Source of the DNA: Selaginella moellendorffii
Lineage: Eukaryota > Plantae > Lycopodiophyta
Direction: 5' to 3'
NCBI RefSeq assembly: GCF_000143415.4
Contig: NW_003314297.1
Coordinates: 62,001-126,000, forward strand
DNA length: 64,000 nt
In this document: in pieces, positions 13,101 to 62,319 of the stretch
Layout of the letters: each line of letters opens with the position of its first letter
Numbering within the stretch: position 1 is the stretch's first letter
Program-made: the position numbers and the translations under genes
Notes under the pieces: generated by a model
What the model saw: only the letters and a program-made list of their open reading frames with translations
Databases searched by the model: none
What the model was told of the DNA's origin: nothing

Positions 13101-14679
13101 ACTTTGGGCGGTGATATCCCTGAGTCCAAGACAACCCCAGATTGGATTCTCCCAGTCTTTCTACATTTACATTTAATGTGTAATTATTTAGGGTCAAAAT
13201 GCTCATGTCTAGATGTGAAGTATATGCATAAATTTGTGTTGCTATGCAATTGCAAGTTTTCTTTCTCTTTTAATCTGTTTTTGAAGATGAGTTATAAATC
13301 AAATTTAAAGGGAGTGTTCATCAGTAAAAATATGACAGTTAAAACATTGACAACAATAAACTTCATACAATGTAAATACTTTGCTGTGGCTTCCATGCAG
13401 CAATGCTTAGTTTGTGTGTTTCACCTATTTATTAATCCAATTGATCAAATGGAAATTTATAATTTATAAATATAAGGATAATCTTATTTCGTAAGATTAA
13501 ACTAGAATATATTAACAAGTGTTTAGGAAAGTTTATAAATTATAAGCGTGTTTATAAATTAGAAAAAAAGATTAATCTAAATGAATACTAACCATTAGAT
13601 TCTAGAATATCCCAGAATATCCAAACATGTTCTAATTACCATACAGTTTTGCTTAAGCAAACCAAAAACCTACATGATGAAATTTAAAACAAGTTCTTGT
13701 AGCAAATAATTTTTAATTATTATTAGCACAATATGAATAAAATATTACAGACTTTAGTCAACAATATTAAATTATATATGTGGCTTGTTTCTGCAATAGA
13801 TTGGTGGAAGTCTCTTTTTCTTATATGCATTTTGATCAAATTTAGAATGAATCAAATCTTAACTGGTATAGAGGTATAATATAACAATTAACCCTTACAA
13901 CAATTTCTATACATAATTAAATCTTTCAAAAATATAAAAACCATTAAGAAATATTGCAATAACCAGGTGAAATCATAACTTCAATATCATTGACACACAA
14001 TATAGTATGAATTTTATTAGTTTTATTTGTCAATATTTAATTTCTCTCTAGATACCCCTCATTGATAAACTTACAGGTATGCCAGAGTGTGTAGCAAACT
14101 TGATACATTGTACTTTTGCTATTACAGGGGTGTTGTTTCATTTGGCGTTAAGCACATAGTGCTCCCAGCTACATACGCACACCTTACCTCTTGTATGTAC
14201 TGGGCTTGTGGTATAGTTCAGGTTTCCTTTCGATAGTCTATTCTATTTTATATTCTGTTTTGGCAGTCTTGCAGTGCCCAACAAAAAGCATGAGACTGTG
14301 CAAACAAGTTTGTAAGTTTGTTGTGGAAGTCTTCTCTCTCCCTCCATTCCCATGCTCACGTTCCTCCATCTCCCCGCGCACACCACTCTGAGGTCCTTGT
14401 CCCACCACGCTCTTGCTGAAAACTGCAGGGAAAAATTTCTTAATTTTCTATCGAAGTTCAAGTTGATTGTCAGTGTGGTTTTCATTGGACTTGACACAGC
14501 TGAAAATCTAAAGCAAATGAAAATAAAAAGAGTGGACACCTGATGGAAAAGTGCTACTTTATGTGTGTTTGGATAATACTTGCAATCCATATAACACGAT
14601 CACACCTCAGTCATATCATTCTGTTGCTTAGAACCACGTTACAAAAATTCAACTATAAATTATTTATATAATAAGACAC

Positions 14680-14853
14680 TGTGAGTGCATGGAATATGGA
14701 AAGGGAATACAGAAATGTGCATATCAATTAGCCCAAAAACCCTATCTTATATACAGGAGTGAGTGGTCCGGATTGAAACCAATCCGACAGCTACCAAAAT
14801 CCACTACGCTAATATTAGTATACGGCATCGTAGCCGTACACTTGGCCCTCACA
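14680..14853 (-). repeat. 3' LTR (TGTGAG...CTCACA), with polypurine tract at 14854-14868
   Basis: 6-bp terminal inverted repeat; GAGAGGAGGGGATGA directly precedes it on the minus strand. Confidence 0.9.
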
Positions 14854-14885
14854 TCATCCCCTCCTCTCGGAATAATGGAAGGCCG

Positions 14886-17800
14886 TCAGGGTTCTCTTGT
14901 AGATGGGCCAGGATCTGGAGGAACGTCAGGAGGAGGCATTGGCGGATCTGTAGACGGTATTAACTGCTCCTGATCCCTTTGTATGAAGCGTTTTAACCAC
15001 TGCACATGCACAATCTCCGGAGGATCGGCCTGCTGAACGTCATGCCGAACCTCATAAACTTGCAGTCTAACTTGCCGCAACACCTGATACGGTCCTTTCC
15101 ACTGCGCAAGGAGCCCCTTAGATAAACCACGTACCGTAAGATGGGGAAAACGGACTAACACCAAATCATCCACTTTGTACTCCGCAGGTGGATGATGATG
15201 GGAGTTGTAGCGCCGTTGTTGTCCCACTTGTACGCGGCCTAAGTGTTCGGCAGACTCTGCTCGGACAAGTGGAAGAATGCTTGTCAAATACTGATCCCAT
15301 GACCTAGCATCAGGAGCTCGTGGCAATCACGAAGGTAAACCCAACTCTGTTGGTAATATTGGATCATGACCATATAGAAGTTTATATGGTGAAGCACCAA
15401 TAGAACTCTGCACCCCTGTGACATAGGCATACGGAAGAGACGGCAAATAACCATCCCAATCCGAATGCTGAAAGTTCACATACTTCGAAATCATCCCTTT
15501 GAATGTCCGAACGAGCCGTTCCACCAGACCGTCTGATTGTGGATGATAAGCACTCGTAAAAGTGTGGCGTATCCCCAACCAAGATGTCAAAATATGAAAT
15601 ACCTCAACCATAAATGCAAGACCATTATCCGAAAGAATCCGCTCTAGACAAGAATGCTGGAACACCACTCGATTGAGGAGGAAGTATCCAACAGCAGTTG
15701 CAGAGGCACTAGCAAGAGCACCAACTTCCACCCAACGAGTCAAGTAGTCAGAAGCAATAATAACATACTCATTGCCAACAGTCGATCGTGGAAAAGGTCC
15801 CATAAGATCAAACGCCACAAACTCAAACGGACGGGAAACTGCAATTGACTCCAACCATCCTTCCGCAGCACAAGGGGGAGTATTACGAGCTTGGCACCAA
15901 ACGCAGCTACGCACATATCGGATAATATCACGTCGCATCTCCGGCCAATAGAAAGACCTGTGCAGCTTCTCGGTGACATGACGGTGTCCCATATGCCCAC
16001 CTAGAACAGGAGAATCATGGTAGGCATAGAGAAACCGCGGAATAAACACCGAAGGTACCACCAGTCGTAAATGATCATCAGGATCCGTCCCCACAAAATA
16101 AAGAAGGCCATCTTCAAGGCGATATTGAGAATGTAAATGCCGGAAAGGCAAGTCATTAGCAAGTGATGCAGGATTCTCAAACCCATCTCGAAGCCTTCGA
16201 ATCCACGGCTCAATCTTTTGAGCCTCGCGAACCTCCTCAAGAGAAGGCAGACCTTGCTCTGCACCCTGTGGACACTGAACGTCAAGGACAGCAACCGCCG
16301 ACGGCACAGAATCCTCATCTAGAAACTCCATAGATGCTGGAACAACAGGTTCGTCAGAATGATGAGAAGTGAGTGGAGAAGGAAGAGGAGCTCGAGAAAG
16401 GGCATCAACATCAGCCATAGAACTCCCTGGGCGATGAAAAACATCGAAATCATATATCTGAAGCTTCAAAGCCCATCGAGTCGTACGACCAACCAGGTTC
16501 TTCCGCTTCAATAATGAAGTAACAGCAGCATGGTCACCTTCAAGTAACGTCCGAGAACCATGTAGATATGCATGAAGTTTCTCGAAACCCCAGACTGCTA
16601 CTAAACACTCCTTCTCCGTCGTGGAGTAGTTCATCTCCGCTGGTTGTAATGTACGGCTTATGTATGCAATGGGATGGCACTGACCAGGCACACTCGAGCT
16701 CTCTTGCATCAACACACCTCCAAGACCAATGTCAGAAGCATCCACGCGCAAAATAAAAGGTCGAGTGTAGTTAGGATATGCCAAAACCGGAGGAGTTGTC
16801 AATAGCTCTTTGAGATCCACGAACGCCCGCTCACAATCCGGAGACCAGATGAAAGATGACGTTGATGACTTCAGCAATGCTTGCAATGGTGTAGTGCGAT
16901 CGGAAAGATGATCCACAAAACGACCAAGATACTGCACCTTACCCAAAAAGCGCTGCACATCATTCACACACTTCGGAGTAGAGAACTTTAGAACAACCAC
17001 AAGTTTGTCAGGATCAACTTGCAAACCCTCACGAGAAATACGGTACCCAAGATAAGTTGTATCCTTGGACCCAAACACGCACTTCGACCGCTTCAGCTTT
17101 AAACCAACATCGCGTAGCCGATCCAACACTTTACAAACATTACGAACGTGCTCCTCCCACATCCCCTCCGAGTGGATCAAGACATCATCAATGAAGTCAG
17201 CAGTCACCTCTGGCATATCGCAAAGAACCTCGTCCATCATCCGCTGGAAAGTTGCTGGAGCATTGTTCAAACCAAACGGCATCACCAAGAACTCGTACAA
17301 ACCAAATGGTGTACGAAAAGCAGTCTTAGGAATATCTTCTTCAGCCATTGGTACTTGCCAATACCCAGAAGCAATATCTAGCTTGGTGAACCAATGACTT
17401 TGCCTCAGACGATCCAAGAGATCAGCAATGTGAGGAAGAGGATACACATATGGGATCGTCACTTCGTTTAACGGACGATAGTTGATGCAGAAACGAATAC
17501 TCCCATCAGGCTTTGTCACAAGATGAGGTTCACATGCCCAAGGACTCCGCGACTTTCGAATAACACCCTTTTCCAGCATTTCCTTGACGTTTGCTCGTAA
17601 AATTTTGATCTCCTTAGGTGACCGACGACGAACAGGAACCTTGATTGGACGAGCATCCCCGGTGGGAATTGGATGACGTGTGGCAATCTTGGCCCCAGAT
17701 GATAGGTCAAATTCAAAGAGATCAGAATACTCCTTCATGAGCCGGTCAACTGCTGCAACACAAAGATCGTCGGAGGGATCGAAAAAGGGAAAAGCAGAAC

Positions 17801-18374
17801 AAGATGGAAAGACAGAAGGAAAGAGTGGGGAAACAAAAGTAATGGAAGCAGAGGTAGAAGTAAAGGGATGAAGAGGTATGGAAGTGAGAGGAATGGATGA
17901 AACATAAGGAAGTATGAGACAAAGGGGAGAAGCCTCAAAGTCACACTTGGCATGATTGCGCTGCAATCAATCCATACCAAGAATGAGGTCAAAAGCTTGA
18001 CTCGGCACCACCCGCAATGACTGCAACTCAAGCTCGAGATTGCCCACACGCACAACCAGGTCCACCTCATCCCGTGCACATGCATGTGTACGGCCATTGC
18101 CATAAAGAATGAAAACTGGTTCTGCCGCACGACGCAAGTGTAGACGACAACGTGTGGCAACAGGTCGAGCAATAGAAGATAAACTCGAACCTTTATCAAC
18201 CAACACGGAGAGAATAATAGAAGACTTTTTGTTATAAAAACGAGCTTGGAAAGTAAATACTGGATGAACTGGTGCCGAATGAACCCCTTGATGATACTCC
18301 CGAAAGAAAGATGGAGGGGTCACTGATTTATTCGCGCAAGGTCCCTCTGTTGCTCGCACGACTCCTCGTTTCCC
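14886..18374 (-). pseudogene. pol: pol polyprotein (protease, RT, RNase H, integrase) with premature stops
   Basis: LVDKGSS protease site (DTG altered), RT LDIASGYWQ/PFGLNNAPATFQ/FIDD, RNase H DASDIGLGGVL, integrase HHCC, SDNG, YHPQSDGLVER and GPY motifs. Confidence 0.9.
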
Positions 18375-18460
18375 GGATGCATCTCGGTGTCCAAACCTTC
18401 CACTGCAGCAGCACCCAGGGGACGTTGCTGACGCCAAGGTCTCCACCCAGGAAATGGAGG

Positions 18461-19282
18461 TCACCAATCCAGAAAACGACGGCAACGCCGATAAATATGA
18501 CCAACTTCATCACACGCCCAGCAGCGAATATCACGGCCACGACCACGTCCTCGCACTTGTCCTTGGACTCGAGCAGCAGCAGCATCAACCTCCATTGGAA
18601 CAGGACCATCACCCATAGGAAGTGGAGCGGAAGGACGTGCAGCGAGAAGTGGAAGAGGCGACGTCTCATAACGTTGTGCCAAGTGAAGAGCATTGTCAAG
18701 GGTGGCAGGAGCAAGTGCATGCACAAGTCCGACAAGATCTTGACGAAGTGCTGGCCACAACATTCCTAGCTTGATCCGCTCCGACATATTTGGCTCCGCA
18801 CGAAGCAAAAGACTTCGGAAACGAACGCCAAATTGCATCACCAACTCCGATGGCCCTTGGCGAAGACGATGCAATTGTTGGAAAGCATCATCACAATCAT
18901 CGGCATGTCCGAAGGCTCGTTTGAAAACGTCCGGGAGAACACTCCAATCCCCACGAGTAGCTGCGCTCAAACCATTGTACCACTGCAACGCCGTCCCTTG
19001 GAGACACGTGGGAAACTCACGCAACTGTCGAGCATCATCCCAAGAATGATATGTGGCAATTACCGTAAAGTGATCGAACCAATGGTACACATCATCCCCA
19101 GGATTCCCGCGAAAGAACTCCGGCCGAACGCGAGGATTGGCACCAAGAGCAGGAGGAGTTGTACCACGTGCCGTGAACGCCGCTATCAACTGAGTTTGGT
19201 TGTTCAATTGCAAGCGCATAGCATCAAGCAATTGAACCAACTGTTGCTCTAGAGTCAAAGGAGGAGATTGCGGATCGGCCAT
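18461..19282 (-). CDS. gag: Retrotransposon Gag (ends at a probably mutational TGA)
   Basis: F.G.PGDDV..W, LQGTALQWY, LRQGPSE, GPVPMEVD and CWACDEVGHIYRRC zinc knuckle. Confidence 0.85.
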   Translation of the reverse strand: MADPQSPPLTLEQQLVQLLDAMRLQLNNQTQLIAAFTARGTTPPALGANPRVRPEFFRGNPGDDVYHWFDHFTVIATYHSWDDARQLREFPTCLQGTALQWYNGLSAATRGDWSVLPDVFKRAFGHADDCDDAFQQLHRLRQGPSELVMQFGVRFRSLLLRAEPNMSERIKLGMLWPALRQDLVGLVHALAPATLDNALHLAQRYETSPLPLLAARPSAPLPMGDGPVPMEVDAAAARVQGQVRGRGRGRDIRCWACDEVGHIYRRCRRFLDW

Positions 19283-19474
19283 GAAAATGAACGAAAAAGA
19301 AAGAGCAAAAGAAGAGAAATGACAAAAAAGCTGGAAAGAAATGGTAGATCTAGACAATGCAAAAAGCTAGATCGAAACCAAAATCCTGAAAGGAAAGAAC
19401 AAAAGAAAGGAAATGGAAAAAGCTAGATCTAAACCAAAATCCCAAATCTAAGCACTCCCCAGGGACAATCAAAG

Positions 19475-19493
19475 GTGCCCCTCACCTCCACCA
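19475..19493 (-). other. Primer-binding site, tRNA-Ala-like (TGGTGGAGGTGAGGGGCAC)
   Basis: Starts 1 nt after the 5' LTR on the minus strand; resembles the complement of the tRNA-Ala 3' end (TGGTGGAGATGCGGGG). Confidence 0.7.
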
Positions 19494-19494
19494 A

Positions 19495-19667
19495 TGTGAG
19501 TGCATGGAATATGGAAAAAGAATACAAAAATGTGCATATCAATTAGCCCAAAAACCCTAGTTTATATACAAGAGCAAGTGGTCCGGATTGAAACCAATCC
19601 GACGGCTACCAAAATCCACTACGCTAATATTAGTATACGGCATCGTAGCCGTACACTTGGCCCTCAC
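19495..19667 (-). repeat. 5' LTR
   Basis: Direct repeat of 14680-14853 with about 9-10 mismatches counted by eye; the terminal A is missing. Confidence 0.9.
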
Positions 19668-19889: not shown

Positions 19890-21070
19890 TCAAGCCACAT
19901 AGACATTCTTCCCGGAGAAGTGCTCCGTGTACACCTCGTGCATGTAGTCCCTGTAAGTCCTGCTGCGGTACTTTTCCGGACTCTCCTGGCTCACCAGCTC
20001 TGGAATCGGGCTGATCTCCGCATCTAGTGATGGCCCCAAGAACGCCCCAACGGACAGCCTCGAGCTCTTCGAGTTCACCATCACCCTGTGCAATATGCTC
20101 TTGTATCTCCCATTGCTCAGCTTCTGATACAAGACAATCAACCAAGACAAAGATCAATCCACAGTTTCTCAAAACGTTTTCGACTGCTCGTACCTCTAGC
20201 TGATCGCCCATGTTAACCACCAGCATTCCCTCGAGTGGCCTCACATTGTACCAATCCTCGCCTTGCTTGAGCTGCAATCCCCCGACTCCATCCTGGAGCA
20301 CAAACGTGAGGCCGCCGCTGTCAGTGTGGCCTTCCATCCCCAAGGCCTGCCTCGGGTTCGGGCAAGCCGGATAGAAGTTGGCTCTCGTCAGAAGAACCAT
20401 GTCTTCGAATGCTTCCAGAAGACGGTTTGAGCGGAGGCCAAGTCCCTCGGACATGACCAACAGCATCCTCTTCCCGAGCTTGAAGATGTTTCTGGCGTAC
20501 TCGGATCCAACGTCTCTGTTGCATATAGACCATCAGCAATCTAGAGCAATACCATAATCAAGGAGCGAGATACTGACTTATAGCTGGCTGGGAACGCGGG
20601 CCAGGGGTGCGCTCCGAGGGACTCTTCCTTGAGCCACATCTGGAGGTGGTCGTGCCACTCGAGCTTCTCTTCTTTCGAAGGCATCATGCTGGTGCAGTAG
20701 CGGACGGGTGTGAAGATCTCCTCGGTGTAGTACCGCATCTTGTCCTCGCTGGGCGAGTTGAAGAACTCGAGAGCGCACCTCATCACATCCTCGGTGTGAA
20801 TGCCGTGGTTCTTGAGCTGAACAAGAAATACATCCACTTAGCAAACATGTAGTACAGGAAAAAAGTCACTTCTTGAAATCTTACATAGAACATTCCGTAC
20901 TTTGAGCAAGCGTCAACGAGATCCCTCTCGAAGCTCTCGCTCGCCACATCGACTATCGGCAGCACCGCGTACCGGGAGACATCGGCAGCTCCATTCGGCA
21001 TCATGTATCTGTCTGGAACGCTGTCCAGCGTCCCGTTGCAGCTGTCAACAAATGCCTTGATCCCAGCCAT
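19890..21070 (-). CDS. 2-oxoglutarate/Fe(II)-dependent dioxygenase (plant DOXC class), copy 1; exons 21070-20885, 20816-20578, 20515-20194, 20123-19890
   Basis: LPIVD, ACSKYGMFY|LKNHGI, NFYPACPNP, HTD, LHRV and RLS motifs (HxD...H, RxS); all introns GT-AG and in frame. Confidence 0.93.
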
Positions 21071-21514
21071 GGATGGGACTGTGAAGGCAAGAAAGCTTGA
21101 AATGGAAATCGAATGCTTGGATGCTAGGCTTTCTCAACTTTGAGATGCGGGTAGTGTCCTCCCAGTGCCCTGCTTATATAGTTGCAAAAAATAAGATTTT
21201 CAAGTGGGCAGCACGAAAATGCTAAGAACGTTACCATTGCGCCGATTCCGGATCCGCCCCCGCTCAAGACCATTTTGTGGACTTTTCCGTATCCGTGATC
21301 TGACCAGCGTCCACATGTTGCCTGCCTCGGATCCACATCAAGCGTCAAAGCTCAACTTAGTTGACCCACCACCTAGAAAAATCCATGAACCTTCGCAATT
21401 GTCACGTTTTCTAGTGTGTTTTGAGAAACGAAAAGATCGTCCACGCAAGCGACGGCTACTGCAATACGAACAAGACAAAGGCATAAAAAACGATTATTAC
21501 CTGCGAAGTCGGCA

Positions 21515-22092
21515 ATGGCTCTAGCAATGGCGAGGGAGCTCTTCTCCATCGCCAGCAATCGCTGGGTCATCGCAATGTCGGGCTTCTACCTGATAGCATG
21601 CACCGGAGGCACGCTCACCAGCTTCAGCTTGTCAACGCAGGAGCTCAAAATCTCTCTGTGTTACAAGCAGGAGTCCATCAGCTTCTTCAAGGATCTCGGT
21701 ACCAGCATGGCTTTCCTGGCCATTCGCGGTTGTGTTCCAGACTTTCTTCCAGTTCCACGTCAGCTCCTTTCTGCTCCTCCTTGGGCTTCTACCAACGTTC
21801 CTGTATCTACTGCTTAGCCTCTTCCTCGGGCCCGGGCCTGTCGTCCAGAAGTCCAGCGACAAGTACATTCTCAGCTCGTTCCTCTACCCCACCTTTGCCT
21901 TATCTCATCGTTGTCACAGTCATCGAGGGGAGCATACCGAGCAGGCTTCCAGCCTCGGTGCCTTTGGTGTTCTTTGGTTTGATGCTGCTCATCGTACTAC
22001 TTCTGGTTGTTCTGGTTGTCCAAGCTGAGCTTCGATCACATTCGAACGGTGCTGGTGTTGTCGATCAACTCCGAAGCATCCAGACACCACGA
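21515..22092 (+). pseudogene. Nodulin-like/NFD4-type MFS transporter, 5' fragment (copy 1)
   Basis: NRWVIAMSGFYLIACTGG...LCYKQES...FFKDLG N-terminus; deletions and frameshifts; paralogous to 54905-55474. Confidence 0.75.
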
Positions 22093-22993
22093 GTAATTCC
22101 TACATGCCCTACAACGTCGTCTTGGATGGCCATGTCTTCTCTGATCTCGGTAAAGATCATACGATCAATCCAAGCTATTTTCATGACTAAAGCTCTGTGT
22201 CAATTGGCTCTGACGATGCTACCGTGGATACATTCGGAGAGATGCTTCGCGAGATGGCGCACGATTTATATCCCGGCTTGGTCAGCTTCTACCGCCTAGA
22301 CGAATTCTTGCTGGACCACCACAGCGACGAGAGCATAGCGGAGCTCGTTTCCGGCATCGAGCTGGAGCATCCCATCGCCACCGACCCCACCTCCAACGCC
22401 GAGACCGCGAGACGAGCTCTCATCCGCTTGTTTGGAAGCGACGAGTAGGCCGTGCACAGGGACATCAAGGAGGACCCGGAGACGCGCAATTTGTACCGCG
22501 GCTTCTCCAGGTTCATGCTTGAGGATCTCTACGAGCACAAGAGTTGCAAGAGTCTCCCATCCAAGTCGGCCAAGAAGAAGCTGTGCAGCCAAGTCGGCTT
22601 CCTCATATCGCGCCTACTCGGCGATGGTGGAGTGGCTCTTTCCACTGCAACTCCGCGTCTCCATAAATCCGCATCCCAACCAAACTACGGCATCAACGTG
22701 ATCCACTCCTCGCTCGTGGCGGTGCAGCGCTCCTCCGAGGAGAGGAACTTCCACATACCGACTCAACAAGAACTTGCCATCGGACAGCATAACGTAATCG
22801 TGGAGCTGTCCGATGGCAAGTTCTTGTTGCTCCACTTCACGATCATCCGGGGATGAGGATCGGGTGTGGGAGATTTGGCTTGCGAGGAGCTCGAGCATGA
22901 GATGCTGCTCAAGCGTGACGGGTTCGAGATGACGTGTGAGGTATCCAGATGGGAGGCCCAGCCACTACAGGCAAGTGAGTGTGTGCTAGATTA
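22093..22993 (+). pseudogene. Isocyanide synthase (Dit1/PvcA family, fungal CrmA/XanB-like), 3' fragment
   Basis: NVVLDGHVFSDL|54-nt intron|VGSDDATVDTFGEMLREM...HPIAT...LYRGFSRFMLEDL...SKSAKKKL...AYSAMVEWLFP..LRVSINPHPN..YGI...HIPT..HNVIVELSDG. Stop at 22446, frameshifts, acceptor mutated to AA at 22202-22203. Confidence 0.8.
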
Positions 22994-23759
22994 GAACAAG
23001 CGAGGCTCTAGAGCTCCAAAACAATTTTCGGCACCACGAGGACTCAGATTCCCTGGTCAATTCGGACGAATTTTGGCTTTGCGTGATTGAAGGAATTCAA
23101 AAATTTTAAGAGAATCTAAACTGGGATTGCTATTGGCGCTTGTCAAGAATGTCGACTCCTGCTTAGCTTAAGAAAGCTGTCCGTTTGATCCAACTCCAGT
23201 CAAAGTTTGCTGAGAAATATTTTCGCTCGGCACTCCTGGTTCCATGCTATCACTTTCTAGGATTTGAAATTCGGCTTCATTGTCTTTCTTGAAGTCCCTG
23301 TTTATAAAAAATCTGGCTGTTTGAAATCGTGTTAGAACATCTAGGTCATATTCTGGCCTTCAGAGCAACCAAGTAAGTTAGCACTCCCTGTAATCTATGT
23401 CGGAGATGGTTGATAGAAAATGTAGCAAATGGAGAAGGAATGAACTCTCATTCGACATTCAGATATATCCCAAAGCGCCATTATACTGCCATCACGAGTG
23501 CATTCTTCTCACGGCATGCTTGAAACACTATAAATCAGGGAAGCATGGGGAAAGCAGTGTTGAGGAAAGTATATAAGGTATGAGCCAGTCATGCATGATA
23601 TTAGACACATCTAAATCAGGTTCATTAGCAAAATCACTGTTTATATTGTATCACTAGAGAAACTGCCGAGAAGGACAGACAACCACACGATAACCTGGGA
23701 CCATTTAAACAGTTAAATGCATTAAATGAAATGTATTATATAGTGATCTTGGTAGTTTT

Positions 23760-24330
23760 TGCTGTACTAGACTATTTGAATTCAACCACTTAAACCGAGT
23801 ATCTAAGATGCACGCGCAGCTCACTTGCCAGCACTGTCATGGGCTTGCAAGGTCCAACTCATAAGTGCCAGATACATTGTGCTGTTAAGACTGCTGCTTG
23901 TGCACGAGACCTCTGTACGATGGTTGCTCCCATGCTGTACGGCGTCCTGATCTTAGACGGTTTCTGGTACCCTCTGTTTCCCTCGAGTTAAGGTTCCATA
24001 AAACAGAGCCAGATTCTTGTTGGGGTCACCAATGGAGGCCAAGGCCCTGGACAGTGTAGACAGATGATCAGTGTCCTGAAGAACTTGTAGATATCAAGGA
24101 ACGGAGGGAAAGGCTGGTAAGCAGGCTTGTCGATATACGCTACACAAATAGGACAGCACCACAACTGATAAGTCCATACTTCATGACCTCAATGAGAGGA
24201 TGCATGAAATGATAGAAATAGCATAGTTAACTGCAAAATCATATATCTCCCCATTGACCATGAGTTGATCTCCATTTCTCTCCAGGCATTTCCTTCAAAT
24301 CTGCAACAACTTCAATGCAGCATATGGCCA
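23760..24330 (-). repeat. Degenerate unidentified sequence paralogous (inverted) to 63285-64000
   Basis: 24035-24140 matches the reverse complement of ~63895-64000; 24240-24330 matches 63285-63410. Confidence 0.65.
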
Positions 24331-24489
24331 TTGCACAACCGTAGCCCTTCCAGATTGTCACGTGAAACATGTTTAAACTATTCTAGTGGAAAACAAGTAT
24401 TTCATGCCTGGGACTGCCTTGATTCCTGCCACTTTGGTTTCCATATAGTTTTTTAGTCACATGTTGATATTTCAAATGCCCAGAAGAGT

Positions 24490-32012: not shown

Positions 32013-32062
32013 TTTCTACAAAGAAGTTCTACGAGGAAGAACTTAGAAGGAAGATATGTCTC

Positions 32063-52495: not shown

Positions 52496-52639
52496 CCATT
52501 ATAAGTTGATCAAATTGTTATCTCGTGCTAAGTCCATGTTGCAAAGAATATACAGAACAGAGAGAGAGTCCCTATCTACATGCATTATTCCGTCCCTCAA
52601 AAGATTGTTTGGACATCCTTTATCATTTCTATCTTGGCA

Positions 52640-53738
52640 ATTGCTTCATCAAAGTTTGGAGCCCTCCCATTCCACTAAATTGCTTCACCATGTTTGCCAG
52701 CAGCATCTTACTCTTTCTGCCCCTTTCTTGTTGAGCTTCAGGCCTTTCATCTGTTTGGACATTGTTTTTACATTATCAACGCTAGTCCCCGAGCCCTTAG
52801 CGATTCAGAGTATACGAGATCCCAACAAACTCATTCTGCAATTCAATACCTTAGTTTTGCATTCAAATCAAAGCCAGAGTTTGAGAGTCAGCTTCGTTTC
52901 TCGTAGAGTTTTCTTAACTGTTGAGTGTCAAAACTATGCACATTTACGTTGTTGAATCCTGGAATCATGGACATGAGCTGCGCACACAATCAGAAAAAAT
53001 AGTGGTTCTCGAGATAGTAAGATCCTTAGAGATCCCATGCTAGTAATGTTCTCGATTTGATCGCACAAGAATTTAAAACTGATGTTTCCATCCACCAAGT
53101 TTACACCAACTCTGGCTGCAATTCACTTGGAACAACCTCTTTGATTTTCTCAGCAAAACCAGCTATATCTCCCATGTCTGGAGAGACATGTGGAGTCGAA
53201 TCAGAAGTTACCGACAAAAGCTTTTTCTCTACTGGAAAACCAAAACCTTGGCAATTGTCAAGGTTTAAAGGAATAGTTACGCACTAAGAGCTCCGCCACC
53301 TTTTGCATGGCCATCCATCTTGGTGATTATAACAGCACCGACCTTAGCGCTCTCTATAAAGGCCAGTGTTTGATCATTCGCAGCTTGCCATATGCTGCTA
53401 TCCATGACGAAAATGATCAAATCGGGGTTCTGTAAAGTTCGAGAGCAAATGCTAAGTATCCTCAAGAAAAAGACTCTAGCAGCGGCAAGCTCCTCATTCT
53501 CTTGTTTGTGTCTTCCACTTGTGTCAAGAATGATCAAATCGTGCTTCGCATCGGCGAACTTCCTGACGCCCTCTTGGGCAATCACCACCGGGTCTATCTC
53601 CGAGGGGATCTTCACCTTCGTGGCGTTCTGCTTTAGCGGATCGAATGCTCCAGCCCGGACGGTGTCCGCACAGGCTCTTCCCACACCCACGATCATGACG
53701 ACGTGGTTCTTCCGGCCGGAGTTCATGGAAAACAGCAC
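52640..53738 (-). pseudogene. SRP54: Cytosolic SRP54 pseudogene
   Basis: [52 protein letters not shown] and LMSMIPGF remnants. The P-loop is deleted and there are stops and frameshifts. Confidence 0.85.
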
Positions 53739-54049: not shown

Positions 54050-55474
54050 AAAAAAAAGGAAGATGAGAGCTCTGCTATCATCGTCAGTAGCAGCAACTTT
54101 TCTCATCAACCTGGGCCTCACCTCCGGCGATGGCGCACCCAAACAAACAGGTGGCGGCCATGACGAAGAAGGTTTCGCTGTAGCACTTGGCACCGTGGCA
54201 CAAGAGCCCGGTCTCCAGCGTGTCAGGGCCCCGATATCTCCTGGCTTGTCGATCGTAGAACACACCCGCAACTTCCACCGACAGGACGAACGTCCCAATC
54301 CCCTTTGCGATGTTTGGGAAGCTCTGGAGAACTCCATAGTGTTTGAGCCCGAAGATCTCCGCGATGATGGTCGATAGCAACCGCCCACTGTCCTCCGGTG
54401 GCGAGGCCGATGATGATGGAGCCGATGTACAGCGCACCGGGAAGGCCCAAGGCGATGAGCAAGTTGCCGAGCACTAGAAAGCCAACCACAGCAGCGAAGA
54501 CGAACGGCCGTCCAATGCCAAACTTGTGAGGAATATCTCGGACACGAAGCCGCAGCCGACTGCTCCCAGGAAGTCCCAGATGTTGAGGAGAGCCACGAAG
54601 ATGTTCATCCTCGCGGTGGAGTCGCTCAGCTGGCCCAAGTTGCTGTAGAAGGTAGACACGGTTCCCAGGCCGCAGGAAGTTGCGATCACCATGAGCCACG
54701 TGTCGATGCTCAGCAAGGCGTGGACCAGCCTGTAGTCCTTCCCTCTCACCGGAACTTGGAACCATCTGTAGATGCAAGCGCTGGAAGCTTGAGAAGGAGA
54801 ATGTCGACGACTTGCAGAGCACTACGGGTGGAATTCATATCCGCGATCTGAGTTTCAGACTTGTCAGTTGGCGGTGGTGTCTGGATGCTTTCAAGTTGAT
54901 CGACAGACTCTCGTGGTGTCTGGATGCTTCGGAGTTGATCGACAACACCAGCACCGTTCGAATGTGATCAAAGCTCAGCTTGGACAACCAGAACAACCAG
55001 AAGTAGTACGATGACCAACATCGAGGCTGGAAGCCTGCTCGGTATGCTCCCCTCAATGACTGTGACGACGATGAGATAGGCCCTTAAGGCAAAGGTGGGG
55101 TAGAGGAACGAGCTGAGAATGGACTTGTCGCTGGACTTCTCGACGACAGGCCCAGGCCCGAGGAAGAGGCCAAGCAGTAGATACAGGAACGTTGGTAGAA
55201 GCCCAAGGAGGAGCAGAAAGGAGCTGACATGGAACTGGAAGAAAGTCTGGAACACAACCGCGAATGGCCAGGAAAACCATGCTGGTACCGAGATCCTTGA
55301 AGAAGCTGATGGTATTGACGGACTCTTGCTTGTAACACAGGGAGATTTTGAGCGCCTGCGAGAACAAGCTGAAGCTGGGCCTCCGGTGCATGCTATCAGG
55401 TAGAAGCCCGACACTGCGATGACCCAGCGATTGCTGGCGATGGAGAAGAGCTCCCTCGCCATTGCTAGAGCCAT
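54050..55474 (-). pseudogene. Nodulin-like/NFD4-type MFS transporter (copy 2, longest; frameshifted, internal deletions)
   Basis: DYRLVHALLSIDTWL...CGLGT...SNLGQL...IFVALLNIWDFLG, LYIGSIIIG, IIAEIFGLKHYG and C.GAKCYSETF are spread over several frames. Confidence 0.82.
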
Positions 55475-55932: not shown

Positions 55933-57111
55933 ATGGCTGGCATCAAGGCATTTGTTGACAGCTGCAACGGGACGCTGGACAGCGTTCCGGACAGATACAT
56001 GATGCCGAATGGAGCTGCCGATGTCTCCCGGTACGCGGTGCTGCCGATAGTCGATGTGGCGAGCAAGAGCTTCGAGAGGGATCTCGTTGACGCTTGCGCA
56101 AAGTACGGAATGTTCTACGTAAGTTTTCAAGAAGTGTCTTTTCCTGTAGTACATGTTTGCTAAGTGGGTGTATTTCTTGTTCAGCTCAAGAACCATGGCA
56201 TTCACACCGAGGATGTGATGAGGTGCGCTCTCGAGTTCTTCAACTCGCCCAGCGAGGACAAGATGCGGTACTACACCGAGGAGATCTTCACGCCCGTCCG
56301 CTACTGCACCAGCATGATGCCTTCGAAGGAAGAGAAGCTCGAGTGGCACGACCACCTCCAGATGTGGCTCAAGGAAGAGTCCCTCGGAGCGCACCCCTGG
56401 CCCGCGTTCCCAGCCAGCTACAAGTCAGTATCTCGCTCCTTGATTATGGTATTGCTCTAGATTGCTGATGCTCTATATGCAACAGGGACGTTGGATCTGA
56501 GTACGCCAGAAACATCTTCAAGCTCGGAAAGAGGATGCTGTTGGTCATGTCTGAGGGACTTGGCCTCCGCACAAGCCGTCTTCTGGAAGCATTCGAAGAC
56601 ATGGTTCTTCTGACGAGAGCCAACTTCTATCCGGCTTGCCCGAATCCGAGGCAAGCCTTGGGGATGGAAGGCCACACCGACAGTGGTGGCCTCACGTTTG
56701 TGCTCCAGGATGGAGTCGGGGGATTGCAGCTCAAGCAAGGCGAGGATTGGTACAATGTGAGGCCACTCGAGGGAATGCTGGTGGTTAACATGGGCGATCA
56801 GCTAGAGGTACGAGCAGTTGAAAACTTTTTGAGAAACTGTGGATTGATCTTACTCTTGGTTGGTTGTCTTATATCAGAAGCTGAGCAATGGGAGATACAA
56901 GAGCATACTGCACAGGGTGATGGTGAACTCGAAGAGCTCGAGGCTGTCCGTTGGGGCGTTTCTTGGGCCGTCACTAGATGCGGAGATCAGCCCGATTCCA
57001 GAGCTGGTGAGCCAGGAGAGTCCGGCAAAGTACCGCAGCAGGACTTACAGGGACTACATGCACGAGGTGTACACGGAGCACTTCTCCGGGAAGAATGTCT
57101 ATGTGGCTTGA
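55933..57111 (+). CDS. 2OG/Fe(II) dioxygenase, copy 2 (4 exons, intact)
   Basis: Near-identical to copy 1; HTD/H/RLS motifs; TATA box CTATATAAA at ~55824. Confidence 0.93.
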
Positions 57112-57335: not shown

Positions 57336-58409
57336 GGGAAGGAATAAGAGAAATTTTTGTTAACAGGTGTCTCATTATATAAATAATTTATAGTTGAATT
57401 TTGTAACGTGGTCCTAAGCGCCAGAATTATATGACAGGTGTGGATTGAAAGTACTATCCAAACACACAAAAAGCAGCACTTTCCCATCAGGTGTCCACTC
57501 TTTTTATTTTCATTGGCTTTAGATTGTTAGCTGTGTCAAGTCCAGTGAAAACCACACCGACAATCAACTATAGAAAATTAAGTGAGCTGGGCTGGGAGAT
57601 GGAGGAACGTGAGCGTGGGAATGGAGGGAGAGAGAAGACTTCCACAACAAACTTGCAAACTTGTTTGCTCAGTCTCATGCTTTTTGTTGGGCACTACGAA
57701 ACTGCCAAAACAGAATATAGAATAAAATAGATTATCCAAAGGAAACCTGAAATATACCACATACAAGAGGTAAGGTGTGAGTACAAACCGACCGCAGATA
57801 GCTGGGAGCACTATGTGCTTAACGCCCTCCCTGCAAGCAAATGAAACAACGCCCCTGTAATAGCAAAAGCACAATGTATCAAGTGTGCTACACACTCCGG
57901 CATACCTGTAACTTTATGAAAAGGAAGACAGAACAGATTTTTTTTCTTATTCGTTGGCACATTACAAGCTCGTTTGCGGATTGAAAGTGTACAATGGACA
58001 CAAGTGCATCAATCCGAGTGGTGAAAACGCTTGTATACGTAAACTGCTTGGTAAAGAGAACTTGGACGAGTCAGCCTCTCGTCCTTCCTATATTAACACA
58101 TACCCAGCACTCTGATGTTCCCACCAGATCCTGCAACTCGTCATTCATCCTGCAAAAGAACCACCGATGTTTCTAAAAAGTACGCTGTACATATCTTACT
58201 TTGAGAATGCGAGCTCCAGAGCTCTCGGTGTACCACACTCCAGAGATGCTCGAATGCGATCCATGGGTCGAGATCGGCGTAACTTGAGAAGTTCGAGTTG
58301 TGGTGCACATCTGTTACCTTCGGAAGAGCTGCATGGAAAATTACTACAACTCGCCTCCATCTTCACTGCTGGTGTGCACCTGGAAATCTCTCAAACATTA
58401 GGAATTTTG

Positions 58410-58993
58410 ATGTGGATGTGGGAGTACGATTGTGTCGAGCGCCCTTTTTGGAGGGTGGAGCGATCGCGCGTGGGCAATGCAGTGCCTAACACCAGCGAGG
58501 ATTCAAGATTATATGAGCAGGTTCGTGAATCTTCCCGAGGAGCAGCGGCAATGGGCGGAGAGTGTCTACTCGAATGGGGAAGGATTGGAGCTTTTCCTTT
58601 TCCAGGTGAACGCCATCGAAGGCGAGGGCTTTGAGTTGTATAAAGAGACCCTGGAGGCGATTGCCGCAGGCGCGCTGCTGGATGGCTCTCAAGATATGAG
58701 CCAAGAGGCTGAAGCCCTGCGTTGCCTCCACAGGGCATTTGCACACCAGCTCCAAGGAAGCAATCCAAACTTGGCACCGAGGCTGAGCGCTTCTGGCATT
58801 CTGGATGCGCACAGGTGCCTGATGGGCTCGAGCAAGCCAGACATCGCCAGGAGGCTGAGGCGCGAAGACGAGATTGCCTTCACCATGACGACACTGAGCT
58901 TGCCGCATGTTTTCATGTGGCCTTCGGACGTGGAGGGAGCTCTTCACAGGCTCGTGGATGCGGAGCTAGATGAGCTCTTCGCGAGAGATTGTC
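58410..58993 (+). pseudogene. Fic-domain gene, 5' half (copy 1)
   Basis: Closely matches 62213-62810; 11-nt deletion near 58498; breaks before the Fic motif. Confidence 0.85.
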
Positions 58994-59068
58994 AAGACAC
59001 TCTTTTAAAACTATTTATTGTAAACACCAATGTTGCCTATTTCTAGAGGAGATAGAGGATAGAACACC

Positions 59069-59332
59069 GAGGGGAGCATACCGAGCAGGCTTCCAGCCTC
59101 GGTGCCTTTCGTTTGATGCTGGTCATCGTACTACTTGTGGTTGTTCTGGTTGTCCAAGCTGAGCTTCGATCACATTCGAACGGTGCTGGTGTTGTCGATC
59201 AACTCCGAAGCATGCAGACACCACGAGTAATTCCTACATGCACTACAACGTCGTCTCAGATGGCCATGTCTTCTCTGATCTCGGTAAAGATCACACGATC
59301 GATCCACGCTCTTTTCATGACTAAAGTGTCAG
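59069..59332 (+). pseudogene. MFS/isocyanide-synthase junction fragment (second ICS remnant)
   Basis: Paralog of ~21925-22203; reads NVVSDGHVFSDL|GTAAAG...TGTCAG with the intact SDG motif. Confidence 0.75.
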
Positions 59333-59575
59333 CACGCCACCTTCCTCGCTACGATCGAACTCCTGCTCTTTTCGAAGCATTCCCGGTAGTCATCCCCGTC
59401 CACAAAAGGAGGGTCCTGCTTCATACTTTCCACCAACAAGGTATTCGGGAACGGCGCAAGTGACTGCAATAGCTTTGCGAGCAGTACTCCCCCGATCCTC
59501 CCATTCCCGTCCTTGAAAGGATGTCAAACTCGAGGAAGAACCGTGCCCCGAGCTTGAGAAGTATCTCAGTCCGAT
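59333..59575 (-). pseudogene. Fic-domain gene, 3' fragment (inverted)
   Basis: Reverse complement of ~62815-63075 (LLKLGARFFLEF...) with small deletions through the HPF motif. Confidence 0.85.
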
Positions 59576-59973
59576 GACTGTGACAACGATGAGATAGGCC
59601 CTTAAGGCGGCAAAGGTGGGGAACGAGCTGAGAATGGACTTGTCGCTGGACTTCTTGACGACAGGCCCGGGCCAGAGGAAGAGGCCAAACAGTAGATACA
59701 GGAAGGTTGGTAGGAGCCCAAGGAGGAGCAGAAAGGAGCTGACGTGGAACTGGAAGAAAGTCTGGAACACAACCGCGAATGGGCGGGAAAGCCATGCTGG
59801 TACCGAGATGATGTTATTGACGGACTCTTGCCTGTAACACAGGGAGATTTTGAGCGCCTGCGAGAACAAGCTGAAGCTGGTGAGCGTGCCTCCGGTGCAT
59901 GCTATCAGGTAGAAGCCCTGACCCAGCGATTGCTGGCGATGGAGAAGAGCTCCCTCGCCATTGCTAGAGCCAT
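59576..59973 (-). pseudogene. Nodulin-like MFS 5' fragment (copy 3)
   Basis: Paralog of 55060-55474 with additional deletions. Confidence 0.78.
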
Positions 59974-60421: not shown

Positions 60422-61601
60422 ATGGCTGGCATCAAGGCATTTGTCGACAGCTGCAACGGGACGCTGGACAGCGTTCCGGACAGATACATGATGCCGAATG
60501 GAGCTGCCGATGTCTCCCGGTACGCGGTGCTGCCGATAGTCGATGTGGCGAGCGAGAGCTTCGAGAGGGATCTCGTTGACGCTTGCTCAAAGTACGGAAT
60601 GTTCTACGTAAGTTTTCAAGAAGTGTCTTTTTCCTGTAGTACATGTTCGCTAAGTGGATGTATTTCTTGTTCAGCTCAAGAACCACGGCATTCACACCGA
60701 GGATGTGATGAGGTGCGCTCTCGAGTTCTTCAACTCGCCCAGCGAGGACAAGATGCGGTACTACACCGAGGAGATCTTCACGCCCGTCCGCTACTGCACC
60801 AGCATGATGCCCTCGAAGGAAGAGAAGCTCGAGTGGCACGACCACCTCCAGATGTGGCTCAAGGAAGAGTCCCTCGGAGCGCACCCCTGGCCCGCGTTCC
60901 CAGCCAGCTACAAGTCAGTATCTCGCTCCGTGATTATGGTATTGCTCTAGATTGCTGATGTTCTATATGCAACAGGGACGTTGGATCCGAGTACGCCAGA
61001 AACATCTTCAAGCTCGGGAAGAGGATGCTGTTGGTCATGTCTGAGGGACTTGGCCTCCGCACAAATCGTCTTCTGGAAGCATTCGAAGACATGGTTCTTC
61101 TGACGAGAGCCAACTTCTATCCGGCTTGCCCGAATCCGAGGCAAGCATTGGGGATGGAAGGCCACACCGACAGTGGTGGCCTCACGTTTGTGCTCCAGGA
61201 TGGAGTCGGGGGATTGCAGCTCAAGCAAGGCGAGGATTGGTACAATGTGAGGCCACTCGAGGGAATGCTGGTGGTTAACATGGGCGATCAGCTAGAGGTA
61301 CGAGCAGTCGAAAACTTTTTGAGAAACTGTGGATTGATCTTTGTCTTGGTTGGTTGTCTTGTATCAGAAGCTCAGCAATGGGAGATACAAGAGCATACTG
61401 CACAGGGTGATGGTGAACTCGAAGAGCTCGAGGCTGTCCGTTGGGGCGTTTCTTGGGCCGTCACTAGATGCGGAGATCAGCCCGATTCCAGAGCTGGTGA
61501 GCCAGCAGAGTCCGGCAAAGTACCGCAGCAGGACTTACAGGGACTACATGCACGAGGTGTACACGGAGCACTTCTCCGGGAAGAACGTCTATGTGGCTTG
61601 A
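60422..61601 (+). CDS. 2OG/Fe(II) dioxygenase, copy 3 (4 exons, intact)
   Basis: Near-identical to copies 1 and 2; TATA box CTATATAA at ~60312. Confidence 0.93.
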
Positions 61602-62319
61602 GCCTTGGATAGTCTTAGGCACCAATTTTTTTCTCATCTCACAGATTTTTGCTCACAAGGATCTTAATGTGATAAGCCACATACGAAATTTGCTCCCTTG
61701 ACCGACTGTGTGCTGCCTAGAAGGTCGTAAAGTTTAACAATCTGGGAGGGAATAACAATCATTAACAGGATTTTTGTAAGGTCAGATGAGGTGTGATCGT
61801 GTGATATGGATTGAAACTACTATCCAAACACATGAAAAACAGCGCTTTTCCATCAGGTGTCCACTCTTTTTATTTTCATTTTCTTTAGATTTTCAGCTGC
61901 GTCAAGTCCAATGAAAACCACACCGACAATCAGCTTGAACTTCGATAGAAAATTAAAAAACTTTTCCCTGCAGTCTTCAGCAAGAGCGAGCAAGGACCTC
62001 AGAGTGGCCTGGGCGAACGTGGGCGTGGGAATGGAAGGAGAGAGAAGACCACAACAATTTTGGAAACTTGTTTGCACATGCTCGAATGCGATCCATGAGT
62101 CGAGATCGACATAACTCGAGATGTTCGAGTTGTGGTGCACCTTCGGAAGAGCTGCATGGAAAATTACTACAACTCGCCTCCATCGCCCCTGGTGTGGAAA
62201 TCTAGGGTTTTGATGTGGGAGTACGATTGGGTGGAGCGCCACTTTTGGAGGTGGAGCGATCGCGCGTGGGCGATGTAGTGCCCAACACCAGCGAAATTCT
62301 CGCCAGGATTCAAGAGAAT

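What the first reader, a model, noticed from the sequence alone, without database searches (positions are those of the whole stretch)
19890..22993. Candidate plant isocyanide biosynthetic cluster: 2OG dioxygenase, MFS transporter, isocyanide synthase
Seen: an intact dioxygenase shares a ~440-bp divergent promoter with an MFS gene whose 5' half is fused directly (at ~22092) to the 3' half of an isocyanide synthase. The same junction recurs at ~59227, and the dioxygenase-MFS pair occurs three times (19.9-22.1, 54.0-57.1, 59.6-61.6 kb). Inference: a deletion collapsed an ancestral order dioxygenase <- -> MFS -> ICS. Established: microbial isocyanide clusters (pvcAB, isnAB, fungal xan/crm) combine ICS with Fe/2OG oxygenase activity and often transporters, although those oxygenases are TauD-type and this one is plant DOXC-type. 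I know of no described plant isocyanide pathway. Here only the dioxygenases remain intact.
Basis: partly seen in the sequence, partly recalled or inferred. Interest (0 to 1): 0.85.

Follow-up and report, generated by a model that had tools for sequence, protein, structure and literature searches.

The report
Duplication scar beside Selaginella isocyanide synthase
In the spikemoss Selaginella moellendorffii, the transporter gene fused to an isocyanide synthase gene is a dead, unexpressed scar of a local DNA duplication; an intact isocyanide synthase gene does sit 3.7 kb from a working dioxygenase gene, but nothing tested here shows the two work together.

Summary
The window is S. moellendorffii scaffold GL377601.1.

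**What is there**
- Three intact, spliced, transcribed DOXC-type 2OG dioxygenase genes (dN/dS 0.04-0.12). Each lies head to head with a nodulin-like/NFD4 MFS gene.
- All three MFS copies are dead, sharing a 91-codon deletion.
- In unit A the MFS stops near residue 289. An 11-nt filler then joins it to codons 239-515 of a DIT1/PvcA isocyanide synthase (ICS) pseudogene.
- The same joint recurs at about 59.2 kb and on the other haplotype, so it arose once.

- An intact ICS (SELMODRAFT_417826) lies 1.3 kb beyond the window's right end and 3.7 kb from dioxygenase C.
- The layout is long MFS at the left and intact ICS at the right, with ICS-3'|MFS-5' joints. That is the signature of a tandem duplication with breakpoints inside both genes.
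- The order MFS->ICS is therefore an artefact.

**Against a functional cluster**
- The dioxygenase-MFS cassette comes from another locus with intact MFS and no ICS.
- Five other intact ICS loci lack both genes.
- No RNA reads were laid on the chimera.

Other windows of this scan had already noted the ICS family and the cassette, and a 2018 paper lists the ICS genes.

The parts
19890..21070 (-). Dioxygenase A. An intact plant DOXC-type Fe(II)/2OG dioxygenase of 326 aa. Exons: 21070-20885, 20816-20578, 20515-20194, 20123-19890.
   Evidence: Pfam DIOX_N and 2OG-FeII_Oxy. Canonical GT-AG gene model. H205-x-D207, H261 and R271-x-S273 are present. RNA reads cross all three introns, with RNA on the minus strand. 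Annotated as EFJ20802.1.
21071..21514 (.). The 444-bp head-to-head spacer between the start codons of the dioxygenase and the MFS.
   Evidence: Sequence read. The dioxygenase 5' UTR reads reach about 21075-21150.
21515..22093 (+). Remnant of a Nodulin-like/NFD4 MFS gene. It holds residues 1-72 and 164 to about 289 of a 567-aa protein, lacks residues 73-163, and has a frameshift near 21905.
   Evidence: Pfam PF06813. tblastn with the intact MFS L011:7757-9460(-). Almost no RNA reads; the few at 21721-21752 continue into unlike sequence.
22094..22104 (.). An 11-nt filler (TAATTCCTACA) at the non-homologous joint.
   Evidence: It matches neither the MFS in unit B nor the intact ICS gene. The identical filler is in piece J, L002 and L004.
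22105..22986 (+). Pseudogene fragment of a DIT1/PvcA isocyanide synthase, codons 239-515 plus the natural stop. It keeps the 57-nt intron at about 22150-22203. Lesions: TAG stop at 22446-22448, deletions of 11 nt (22607), 7 nt (22683) and 2 nt (22935), and an 18-nt insertion at 22765.
   Evidence: Pfam PF05141 on the separate pieces. 71% amino-acid identity and 92.5% DNA identity to P0018 and its gene. Annotated as a 190-aa model, SELMODRAFT_417821. No RNA reads at 97% identity or above.
22764..22829 (.). A 66-nt palindrome made by the 18-nt templated insertion. It replaces the conserved P-W of the motif TPWH.
   Evidence: Self-match 22764-22829. Indel list. Comparison with P0010.
22987..24444 (+). 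Flank downstream of the ICS that was copied together with it, ending in a short piece of the 3' end of the Fic ORF.
   Evidence: Collinear with L003 11605-13032 and with window 64000-63213 in inverted orientation.
14677..19667 (-). A Ty3/gypsy LTR retrotransposon inserted into the far flank of unit A after the duplication.
   Evidence: RVT_1, RNase H and integrase domains. LTR pair 14677-14852 and 19492-19667, 94% identical. The other haplotype joins 14679 directly to 19665.
52616..53738 (-). An SRP54 gene fragment that travelled with the MFS-dioxygenase cassette.
   Evidence: Pfam SRP54. Collinear with the complete SRP54 gene at L010 5599-6948.
54074..55474 (-). MFS B, the longest MFS copy. 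It reaches the C-terminus but lacks residues 73-163 and carries frameshifts and a stop.
   Evidence: tblastn with the intact MFS. Pfam PF06813 and a weak NFD4_C match.
55933..57111 (+). Dioxygenase B, intact. Its product is identical to RefSeq XP_024538906.1.
58246..58998 (+). X1, a decayed copy of the 5' part of the Fic ORF and the sequence upstream of it. It belongs to the first tandem unit.
   Evidence: 88% identical to 62078-62814. The ORFs here have no Pfam match.
59065..59326 (+). Piece J, a second copy of the MFS|filler|ICS joint (joint at about 59227-59238) with only about 90 nt of ICS. It is inverted relative to unit C in this haplotype.
   Evidence: 92% identical to 21921-22192. In L002 the same block lies in line with unit C.
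59329..59573 (-). Y, an inverted copy of Fic ORF positions 62815-63076. It marks a secondary deletion from the Fic ORF into the ICS.
59572..59973 (-). MFS C remnant, residues 1 to about 233, with the same 91-codon deletion.
60422..61601 (+). Dioxygenase C, intact.
62215..63261 (+). A 348-aa ORF with a Fic/DOC domain. It lies between dioxygenase C and the intact ICS, which sits off-window at the equivalent of 65327-66931 on the minus strand (L003:10001-11605).
   Evidence: Pfam PF02661, E = 3.8e-14. Position of the ICS. The ORF is not in the v1 gene list.

Best explanation
The MFS-ICS fusion is a rearrangement scar, not a gene and not a collapsed operon-like cluster.

**History. The steps are inferred; each layout they rest on is shown.**
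1. A block holding SRP54, a nodulin-like MFS gene and a DOXC dioxygenase gene head to head was copied from a parent locus, where such cassettes form a tandem array. The copy landed a few kb from a resident ICS gene of fungal type.
2. The copied MFS lost 91 codons and died.
3. A tandem duplication followed, with one breakpoint in mid-MFS and the other in mid-ICS. It was sealed by end-joining with an 11-nt filler.
   - This produced ICS-3'|MFS-5'.
   - One long MFS was left at the left end and the intact ICS at the right end.
4. The joint-bearing unit was copied once more, in inverted orientation, to give unit A.
5. Later a deletion and a 509-bp inversion trimmed the joint between units B and C.

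**Function.** The dioxygenases stayed functional throughout: they are under purifying selection, spliced and transcribed. Their nearness to the ICS is most likely incidental.
For: **Identity of the window**
- It is 100% identical to GL377601.1.

**The joint**
- It has an 11-nt filler and is identical in four places, so it arose in a single event.
- The ICS fragment keeps its intron, and its downstream flank runs collinear with the flank of the intact ICS as far as the Fic ORF. It is therefore a DNA-level segmental copy.

**The layout**
- Order along the window: long MFS B, dioxygenase B, Fic piece, ICS-3'|MFS-5', dioxygenase C, Fic ORF, intact ICS.
- This is exactly the novel joint a tandem duplication predicts.

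**Parent locus**
- L010/L011 carry a complete SRP54, an intact 567-aa MFS, 326-aa dioxygenases and no ICS.
- Window 52616-57253 is collinear with L010 at 78-88% identity.

**State of the genes**
- All three window MFS copies share the loss of residues 73-163.
- Dioxygenase dN/dS is 0.04-0.12, with spliced, stranded RNA reads.
- No reads were laid on the chimera at 97% identity or above.

**Other ICS loci**
- L005, L006/7, L008, L009 and L012 have no dioxygenase or MFS within 10 kb.
Against: - An intact ICS and two intact, expressed dioxygenase copies do lie within 3.7-9 kb of each other, and the same arrangement appears on the other haplotype (neighbouring accessions D8R584, D8R586 and D8R587).
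- Microbial ICS pathways do pair the synthase with an Fe/2OG dioxygenase. MFS genes are the most common accessory gene in fungal ICS clusters, present in about 60% (PMC10153163).
- Co-expression was not tested, so a recruited, nascent cluster is not excluded.
- A deletion from a tandem [..ICS][MFS..] array would give the same joint as a direct duplication breakpoint.
Confidence: 0.75

Rival explanations
1. This is a relic or nascent plant isocyanide gene cluster. The intact ICS next door makes an isonitrile or N-formyl amino acid, which the neighbouring DOXC dioxygenases modify. The plant enzyme would take the role of the TauD-type PvcB/IsnB, and the MFS once exported the product.
For: - The intact ICS lies 3.7 kb from dioxygenase C.
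- The dioxygenases are conserved and expressed.
- Known ICS pathways combine the ICS with Fe/2OG oxygenases, and fungal ICS clusters are rich in MFS genes (PMC5974471, PMC10153163).
Against: - The same dioxygenase, at 97% amino-acid identity or more, sits with an intact MFS at another locus that has no ICS. Its function therefore does not depend on the ICS.
- None of five other intact ICS loci has these neighbours.
- The MFS is dead in all local copies.
- The dioxygenase is of a different family (PF14226/PF03171) from the TauD-type PF02668 partner.
- By my rough estimate, one ICS-DOXC adjacency among about six loci has a chance probability near 0.1. That figure uses gene numbers from memory and was not computed here.
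Confidence: 0.1
2. An ancestral order dioxygenase<- ->MFS->ICS, with complete genes, was collapsed by a deletion running from mid-MFS to mid-ICS.
For: - The joint has the right polarity, MFS 5' part followed by ICS 3' part on one strand.
- A tandem array of [MFS-dioxygenase-Fic-ICS] units would place a complete ICS next to a complete MFS, and a deletion there gives the same joint.
Against: - It needs two events, a whole-unit duplication and then a deletion, where one duplication with breakpoints inside the genes is enough.
- No complete MFS->ICS adjacency was seen in either haplotype.
- The MFS already carried its 91-codon deletion in all copies.
Confidence: 0.15
3. A transposable element (Pack-MULE, Helitron or retroelement) captured the ICS fragment at random, or the fragment is a retrocopy.
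For: - Gypsy elements flank unit A at 14.7-19.7 kb and at about 24.5-27.3 kb.
- Other ICS fragments are scattered in chimeric gene models P0011, P0012 and P0013.
Against: - The fragment keeps its intron, so it is not a retrocopy.
- About 1.4 kb of its native downstream flank came with it.
- The left gypsy element is a later insertion that is absent at that site in the other haplotype.
- The only inverted repeat seen near the fragment is its internal 66-nt palindrome; no repeat pair brackets it.
Confidence: 0.03
4. This is an assembly artefact. The two haplotypes of the v1 assembly were stacked as false duplicates.
For: The v1 assembly holds both haplotypes, and the region differs strongly between them.
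Against: - Units A, B and C are only 92-94% identical, well below the 98.6% seen between the two haplotypes in the adjacent flank.
- The other haplotype scaffold also carries several units and the same joint.
- The RNA reads show several distinct dioxygenase variants.
Confidence: 0.02

Closest known systems
Fungal dit cluster: DIT1 (an ICS-family enzyme) with DIT2 (a P450), in yeast also the MFS transporter DTR1. Chytrid DIT1-like proteins are the nearest non-plant relatives.
   Same: - The ICS here belongs to PF05141.
- After Selaginella paralogues, its best matches are chytrid 'dityrosine synthesis' proteins at 37-44% identity.
- NCBI names the intact paralogues 'spore wall maturation protein DIT1'.
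   Different: - No P450 lies next to any Selaginella ICS locus examined.
- The fragment in the window is a dead 3' piece.
- DTR1 as the MFS partner is from my own knowledge, not from a tool.
Bacterial pvcAB and isnAB, and fungal XanB (ICS plus a TauD-type Fe/2OG dioxygenase, PF02668)
   Same: An ICS lies near an Fe(II)/2OG-dependent oxygenase.
   Different: - The oxygenase here is the plant DOXC class (PF14226 and PF03171). Its nearest solved structures are JOX2 (6lsv), F6'H1 (4xae) and ANS.
- It also occurs with its MFS partner at a locus without an ICS.
The head-to-head DOXC dioxygenase and nodulin-like/NFD4 MFS cassette of S. moellendorffii (GL377569.1 and GL377663.1)
   Same: Same two genes, same divergent layout, and dioxygenases 97% or more identical in protein. 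Window unit B is collinear with it, including the SRP54 neighbour.
   Different: At the parent locus the MFS is intact (567 aa) and SRP54 is complete. In the window the MFS copies are deleted, frameshifted or truncated, and SRP54 is a fragment.
Chimeric pseudogenes at tandem-duplication breakpoints, sealed by end-joining with filler DNA
   Same: - Two unrelated genes are joined head to tail in mid-coding sequence with a short filler.
- One intact copy of each gene survives at the outer ends of the duplicated block.
   Different: Nothing unusual, apart from later copying of the joint to an inverted site and a small palindromic insertion.

Membership tests
DIT1/PvcA isocyanide synthase family (PF05141), for the fragment at 22105-22986 | Significant similarity to the family profile and to members | tested here: met
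   - The separate pieces score 25.4 and 32.2 bits, and the annotated 190-aa model scores 34.1 bits against a cut-off of 26.4.
- It is 92.5% identical in DNA to the gene of P0018, which is on record with PF05141. Paralogue P0010 matches the profile at 277 bits.
DIT1/PvcA isocyanide synthase family (PF05141), for the fragment at 22105-22986 | Complete domain in an open reading frame | tested here: not met
   It starts at codon 239 of 515, so the first part of the domain is missing. It has one TAG stop, three frameshifting deletions and an 18-nt insertion that removes a conserved P-W.
Plant DOXC-class Fe(II)/2OG dioxygenase | DIOX_N and 2OG-FeII_Oxy domains with the HxD...H iron triad and the RxS 2OG-binding motif | tested here: met
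   Pfam matches. H205, D207, H261, R271 and S273 are present. The nearest solved structures are JOX2, F6'H1 and ANS.
Nodulin-like/NFD4 MFS transporter | Complete 12-helix protein: Nodulin-like N-terminal domain plus NFD4_C | tested here: not met
   All three copies lack residues 73-163 of the intact 567-aa paralogue. Copies A and C are truncated, and copy B has frameshifts and a stop.
Biosynthetic gene cluster for an isocyanide | The backbone ICS is physically linked to a tailoring enzyme | tested here: met
   Intact ICS P0018 lies 3.7 kb from dioxygenase C and about 8 kb from dioxygenase B.
Biosynthetic gene cluster for an isocyanide | The linkage recurs at other ICS loci or is conserved | tested here: not met
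   - None of five other intact ICS loci has a DOXC or MFS gene within 10 kb.
- The cassette's parent locus has no ICS.
- No ICS from another plant appeared in the search, so synteny across species cannot be tested.
Biosynthetic gene cluster for an isocyanide | The member genes are co-expressed | not tested
   The one read-laying run covered unit A only. The intact ICS lies outside the window, in a locus type that the reads tool refuses.
Biosynthetic gene cluster for an isocyanide | A shared pathway or product | not testable with these tools
   This needs heterologous expression and chemistry.
pvcAB/isnAB-type ICS-dioxygenase pair | The partner oxygenase is TauD-type (PF02668) | tested here: not met
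   The partner is PF14226 and PF03171. No PF02668 was listed at any ICS locus.

The most novel reading that the evidence does not exclude
A cluster born in the plant. After a fungal-type ICS gene settled in the spikemoss genome, a native dioxygenase cassette was recruited beside it and then amplified. The DOXC enzymes would now modify an ICS product, a tyrosine-type isonitrile or N-formyl amino acid. That would be a convergent replacement of the TauD-type partner used by microbes, and the first isonitrile pathway of a land plant.
Probability: 0.08. Interest if true: 0.85.

Novelty: new member of a known kind. Interest (0 to 1): 0.3.

Why it matters
As it stands, this is an ordinary duplication scar. 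It shows how gene fragments joined at rearrangement breakpoints can mimic a collapsed gene cluster.

Three results are worth keeping:
- One intact Selaginella ICS gene does have conserved, expressed 2OG dioxygenases as near neighbours. That gives a cheap, specific co-expression and co-expression-in-host test for anyone studying what these horizontally acquired ICS genes do in a plant.
- The dioxygenase-MFS pair is an independent, older two-gene module. It should not be read as part of an ICS pathway.
- The region is a hotspot of structural change and differs strongly between the two haplotypes.

Tried and rejected
**Ideas tested and dropped**
- *Retrocopy origin of the ICS piece.* Rejected: it keeps the 57-nt intron and its native flank.
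- *Transposon capture.* Rejected: no repeat pair brackets the fragment, and the left gypsy element is a later insertion.
- *Five dioxygenase units.* I first misread L003 as lying beyond the window and counted five. L003 overlaps window 55327-64000, so there are three.
- *A conserved partner upstream of the ICS.* I checked whether the roughly 575-aa genes upstream of the ICS in L003 and L009 were such a partner. They are unrelated proteins.

**Searches that fell short**
- The 83-aa ICS piece, run against 1.8 billion representative proteins, found only five Selaginella proteins. The full-length paralogue P0010 was needed to reach the fungi.
- Paper searches for Selaginella with isocyanide synthase, PF05141 or dityrosine found nothing. 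The one DIT1 hit was the chloroplast transporter of the same name.
- The look-up of the allelic ICS P0149 returned nothing.

**Could not be done**
- A full-length MFS relative could not be reached from the short stop-free window pieces. The intact MFS came from the parent locus instead.
Full report
**Where the window comes from.** Exon 3 of the dioxygenase matches '2-oxoglutarate-iron(II)-dependent oxygenase [Selaginella moellendorffii]' at 100% identity. The locus fetched for that protein equals window 9890-31570 at 100%. The window is therefore GL377601.1 of assembly GCA_000143415.2, with record coordinate = window coordinate + 62000. The rest of the window holds PPR genes, a VQ gene, a Ty3/gypsy element and a Fic-domain ORF.

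**Checking the observation.**
- Dioxygenase A (19890-21070, minus strand) has four exons with canonical GT-AG introns. It encodes 326 aa with DIOX_N and 2OG-FeII_Oxy domains and the H205/D207/H261 and R271/S273 motifs.
- Its start codon lies 444 bp from that of a Nodulin-like MFS gene on the other strand.
- Homology to the MFS ends at 22093. An 11-nt filler follows, and ICS sequence starts at 22105.
- The three dioxygenase-MFS units are A (19700-22093), B (57294-54910, with its MFS continuing to about 54074) and C (61742-59572). They are 92-94% identical.
- The joint, filler included, recurs at about 59227-59238 and in both loci of the other haplotype, L002 and L004. It therefore arose once.

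**State of the genes.**
- *Dioxygenases.* All three copies are intact, with pairwise dN/dS of 0.04-0.12. Copy B encodes exactly RefSeq XP_024538906.1.
  - Two stranded RNA-seq runs and two contig sets show reads across all three introns, with RNA on the minus strand. The reads are a mixture of copies.
- *MFS.* Compared with an intact 567-aa paralogue, all three window copies lack residues 73-163.
  - Copy A stops near residue 289 and copy C near residue 233.
  - Copy B reaches the C-terminus but has frameshifts and a stop.
  - The transporter was therefore dead before the units split.
- *ICS piece (22105-22986).* It covers codons 239-515.
  - It keeps the gene's 57-nt intron.
  - It carries one TAG stop, deletions of 11, 7 and 2 nt, and an 18-nt palindromic insertion.
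- *Chimera.* No RNA reads at 97% identity or above lie on it. Only about 12% of each of two runs was read.

**What lies just outside the window.**
- The best intact relative of the fragment is P0018 (SELMODRAFT_417826, 515 aa), with 71% protein identity and 92.5% DNA identity.
- Its locus, L003, overlaps the window: L003 12932-21605 equals window 64000-55327.
- The gene therefore lies at the equivalent of window 65327-66931 on the minus strand. That is 1.3 kb past the window's end and 3.7 kb from the 3' end of dioxygenase C, with a Fic-domain ORF between them.
- The flank downstream of the ICS fragment in unit A (22987-24444) is collinear with the flank of this intact gene, back to the end of the Fic ORF.

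**How the joint arose.**
- In window orientation the order is: SRP54 fragment; MFS B (long, minus strand); dioxygenase B; Fic 5' copy (X1); [ICS 3' piece | MFS 5' part]; dioxygenase C; Fic ORF; flank; intact ICS (minus strand).
- This is what a tandem duplication of the segment from mid-MFS to mid-ICS predicts: one novel joint, ICS-3'|MFS-5'. The only full-length MFS stays at the left end and the only intact ICS at the right end.
- Between units B and C a later deletion from the Fic ORF (63076) into the ICS left only about 90 nt of ICS. In this haplotype a 509-bp block (59065-59573) is inverted, while in L002 it lies in line.
- Unit A is an inverted copy made before that deletion, because it keeps about 880 nt of ICS and 1.4 kb of flank.
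- The filler and the lack of homology at the joint point to end-joining.
I rate it the less likely structural history.

**Is it a biosynthetic cluster?**
- *The cassette has its own home.* On GL377569.1 (L010) and GL377663.1 (L011) a complete SRP54 gene is followed by repeated [MFS 567-590 aa <- -> dioxygenase 326 aa] pairs. No ICS is detectable there.
  - Window 52616-57253 is collinear with L010 at 78-88% identity, including the SRP54 piece.
  - The dioxygenase proteins of the two loci are at least 97% identical.
  - The window locus is therefore the derived copy, and the enzyme's function does not depend on an ICS.
- *Other ICS loci lack it.* Five other intact ICS loci (L005, L006/7, L008, L009, L012) have neither gene within 10 kb.
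- *The ICS paralogues are old.* They share only coding sequence, at 75-78% DNA identity, with no flank homology. P0018 is therefore an old resident that the cassette landed beside.
- *Weight of the evidence.* One adjacency among about six loci is weak evidence. My rough chance estimate is near 0.1, from remembered gene counts, not computed.
- *Still open.* Co-expression of the intact ICS with the dioxygenases could not be tested here.

**Comparison with what is known.**
- *The ICS family.* It is fungal-type. After Selaginella paralogues, the best matches are chytrid DIT1-like proteins at 37-44% identity, and no other plant appears.
- *Lim et al. 2018 (PMC5974471).* They report ICS proteins in 'one species of moss'. 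Their supplementary table lists about 40 S. moellendorffii entries, including SELMODRAFT_417826.
- *Known ICS pathways.* They pair the synthase with a TauD-type PF02668 dioxygenase (PvcB, IsnB, the XanB fusion) or a P450 (Dit2). About 60% of fungal ICS clusters contain an MFS gene (PMC5974471, PMC10153163).
- *The oxygenase here.* It is a plant DOXC enzyme, nearest to JOX2, F6'H1 and ANS among solved structures. It fails that membership test, although a convergent role is not excluded.
- *Literature.* I found no paper describing a plant isocyanide pathway.

**Earlier notes of this scan.** They had already reported the Selaginella ICS family and, in other windows, the amplified dioxygenase-MFS cassette. 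My tests agree with both. A follow-up on this same stretch exists but was withheld.

**Verdict.**

Noticed in passing
L005:6346-8027 and L009:5858-7239 (other ICS loci, outside the window): Two of the six intact ICS loci examined have a PF02458 'Transferase' (BAHD-type) gene within 2-3 kb of the ICS. The two transferases are only distantly related (25-40% identity in patches), so they were not copied together with the ICS. In fungi PF02458 is a domain of the ICS-NRPS-like enzyme CrmA (PMC5974471). This recurrence may be a better cluster lead than the dioxygenase.
   Followed up: partly
window 62215-63261 (+): A 348-aa single-exon ORF with a Fic/DOC domain (E = 3.8e-14) lies between dioxygenase C and the intact ICS. 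It is not in the v1 gene list. Pieces of it were duplicated at 58246-58998 and 59329-59573.
   Followed up: partly
window 14677-19667, compared with L004: This Ty3/gypsy element has LTRs only 94% identical. In the other haplotype it is absent from this site (14679 joins 19665) but lies about 4 kb away in inverted orientation (L004 17636-21412, 96.7% identical). The two haplotypes differ here by large rearrangements.
   Followed up: partly
window 44136-47459 (+) and 18-1808 (+): Long ORFs of 1107 aa and 596 aa have no Pfam match. The first corresponds to part of a 2031-aa annotated gene without domains on the other haplotype (L002:17365-21180).
   Followed up: no
window 7323-12372 and 28183-38969: Five large PPR genes are spread across the window. 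A low-GC block (26-33% GC) at about 24-28 kb holds a second, older gypsy-like element.
   Followed up: no
proteins P0011, P0012, P0013 (other scaffolds): Three further annotated S. moellendorffii 'proteins' are chimeras of ICS fragments with unrelated sequence; P0013, for example, has an LRR-like N-terminus. Decayed ICS pieces are thus scattered through the genome.
   Followed up: no
window 21721-21752: In two RNA runs, 18 reads match only these roughly 32 nt of the MFS remnant and continue into about 117 nt of unlike sequence. They probably come from a transcribed paralogue or an unrelated abundant transcript.
   Followed up: no
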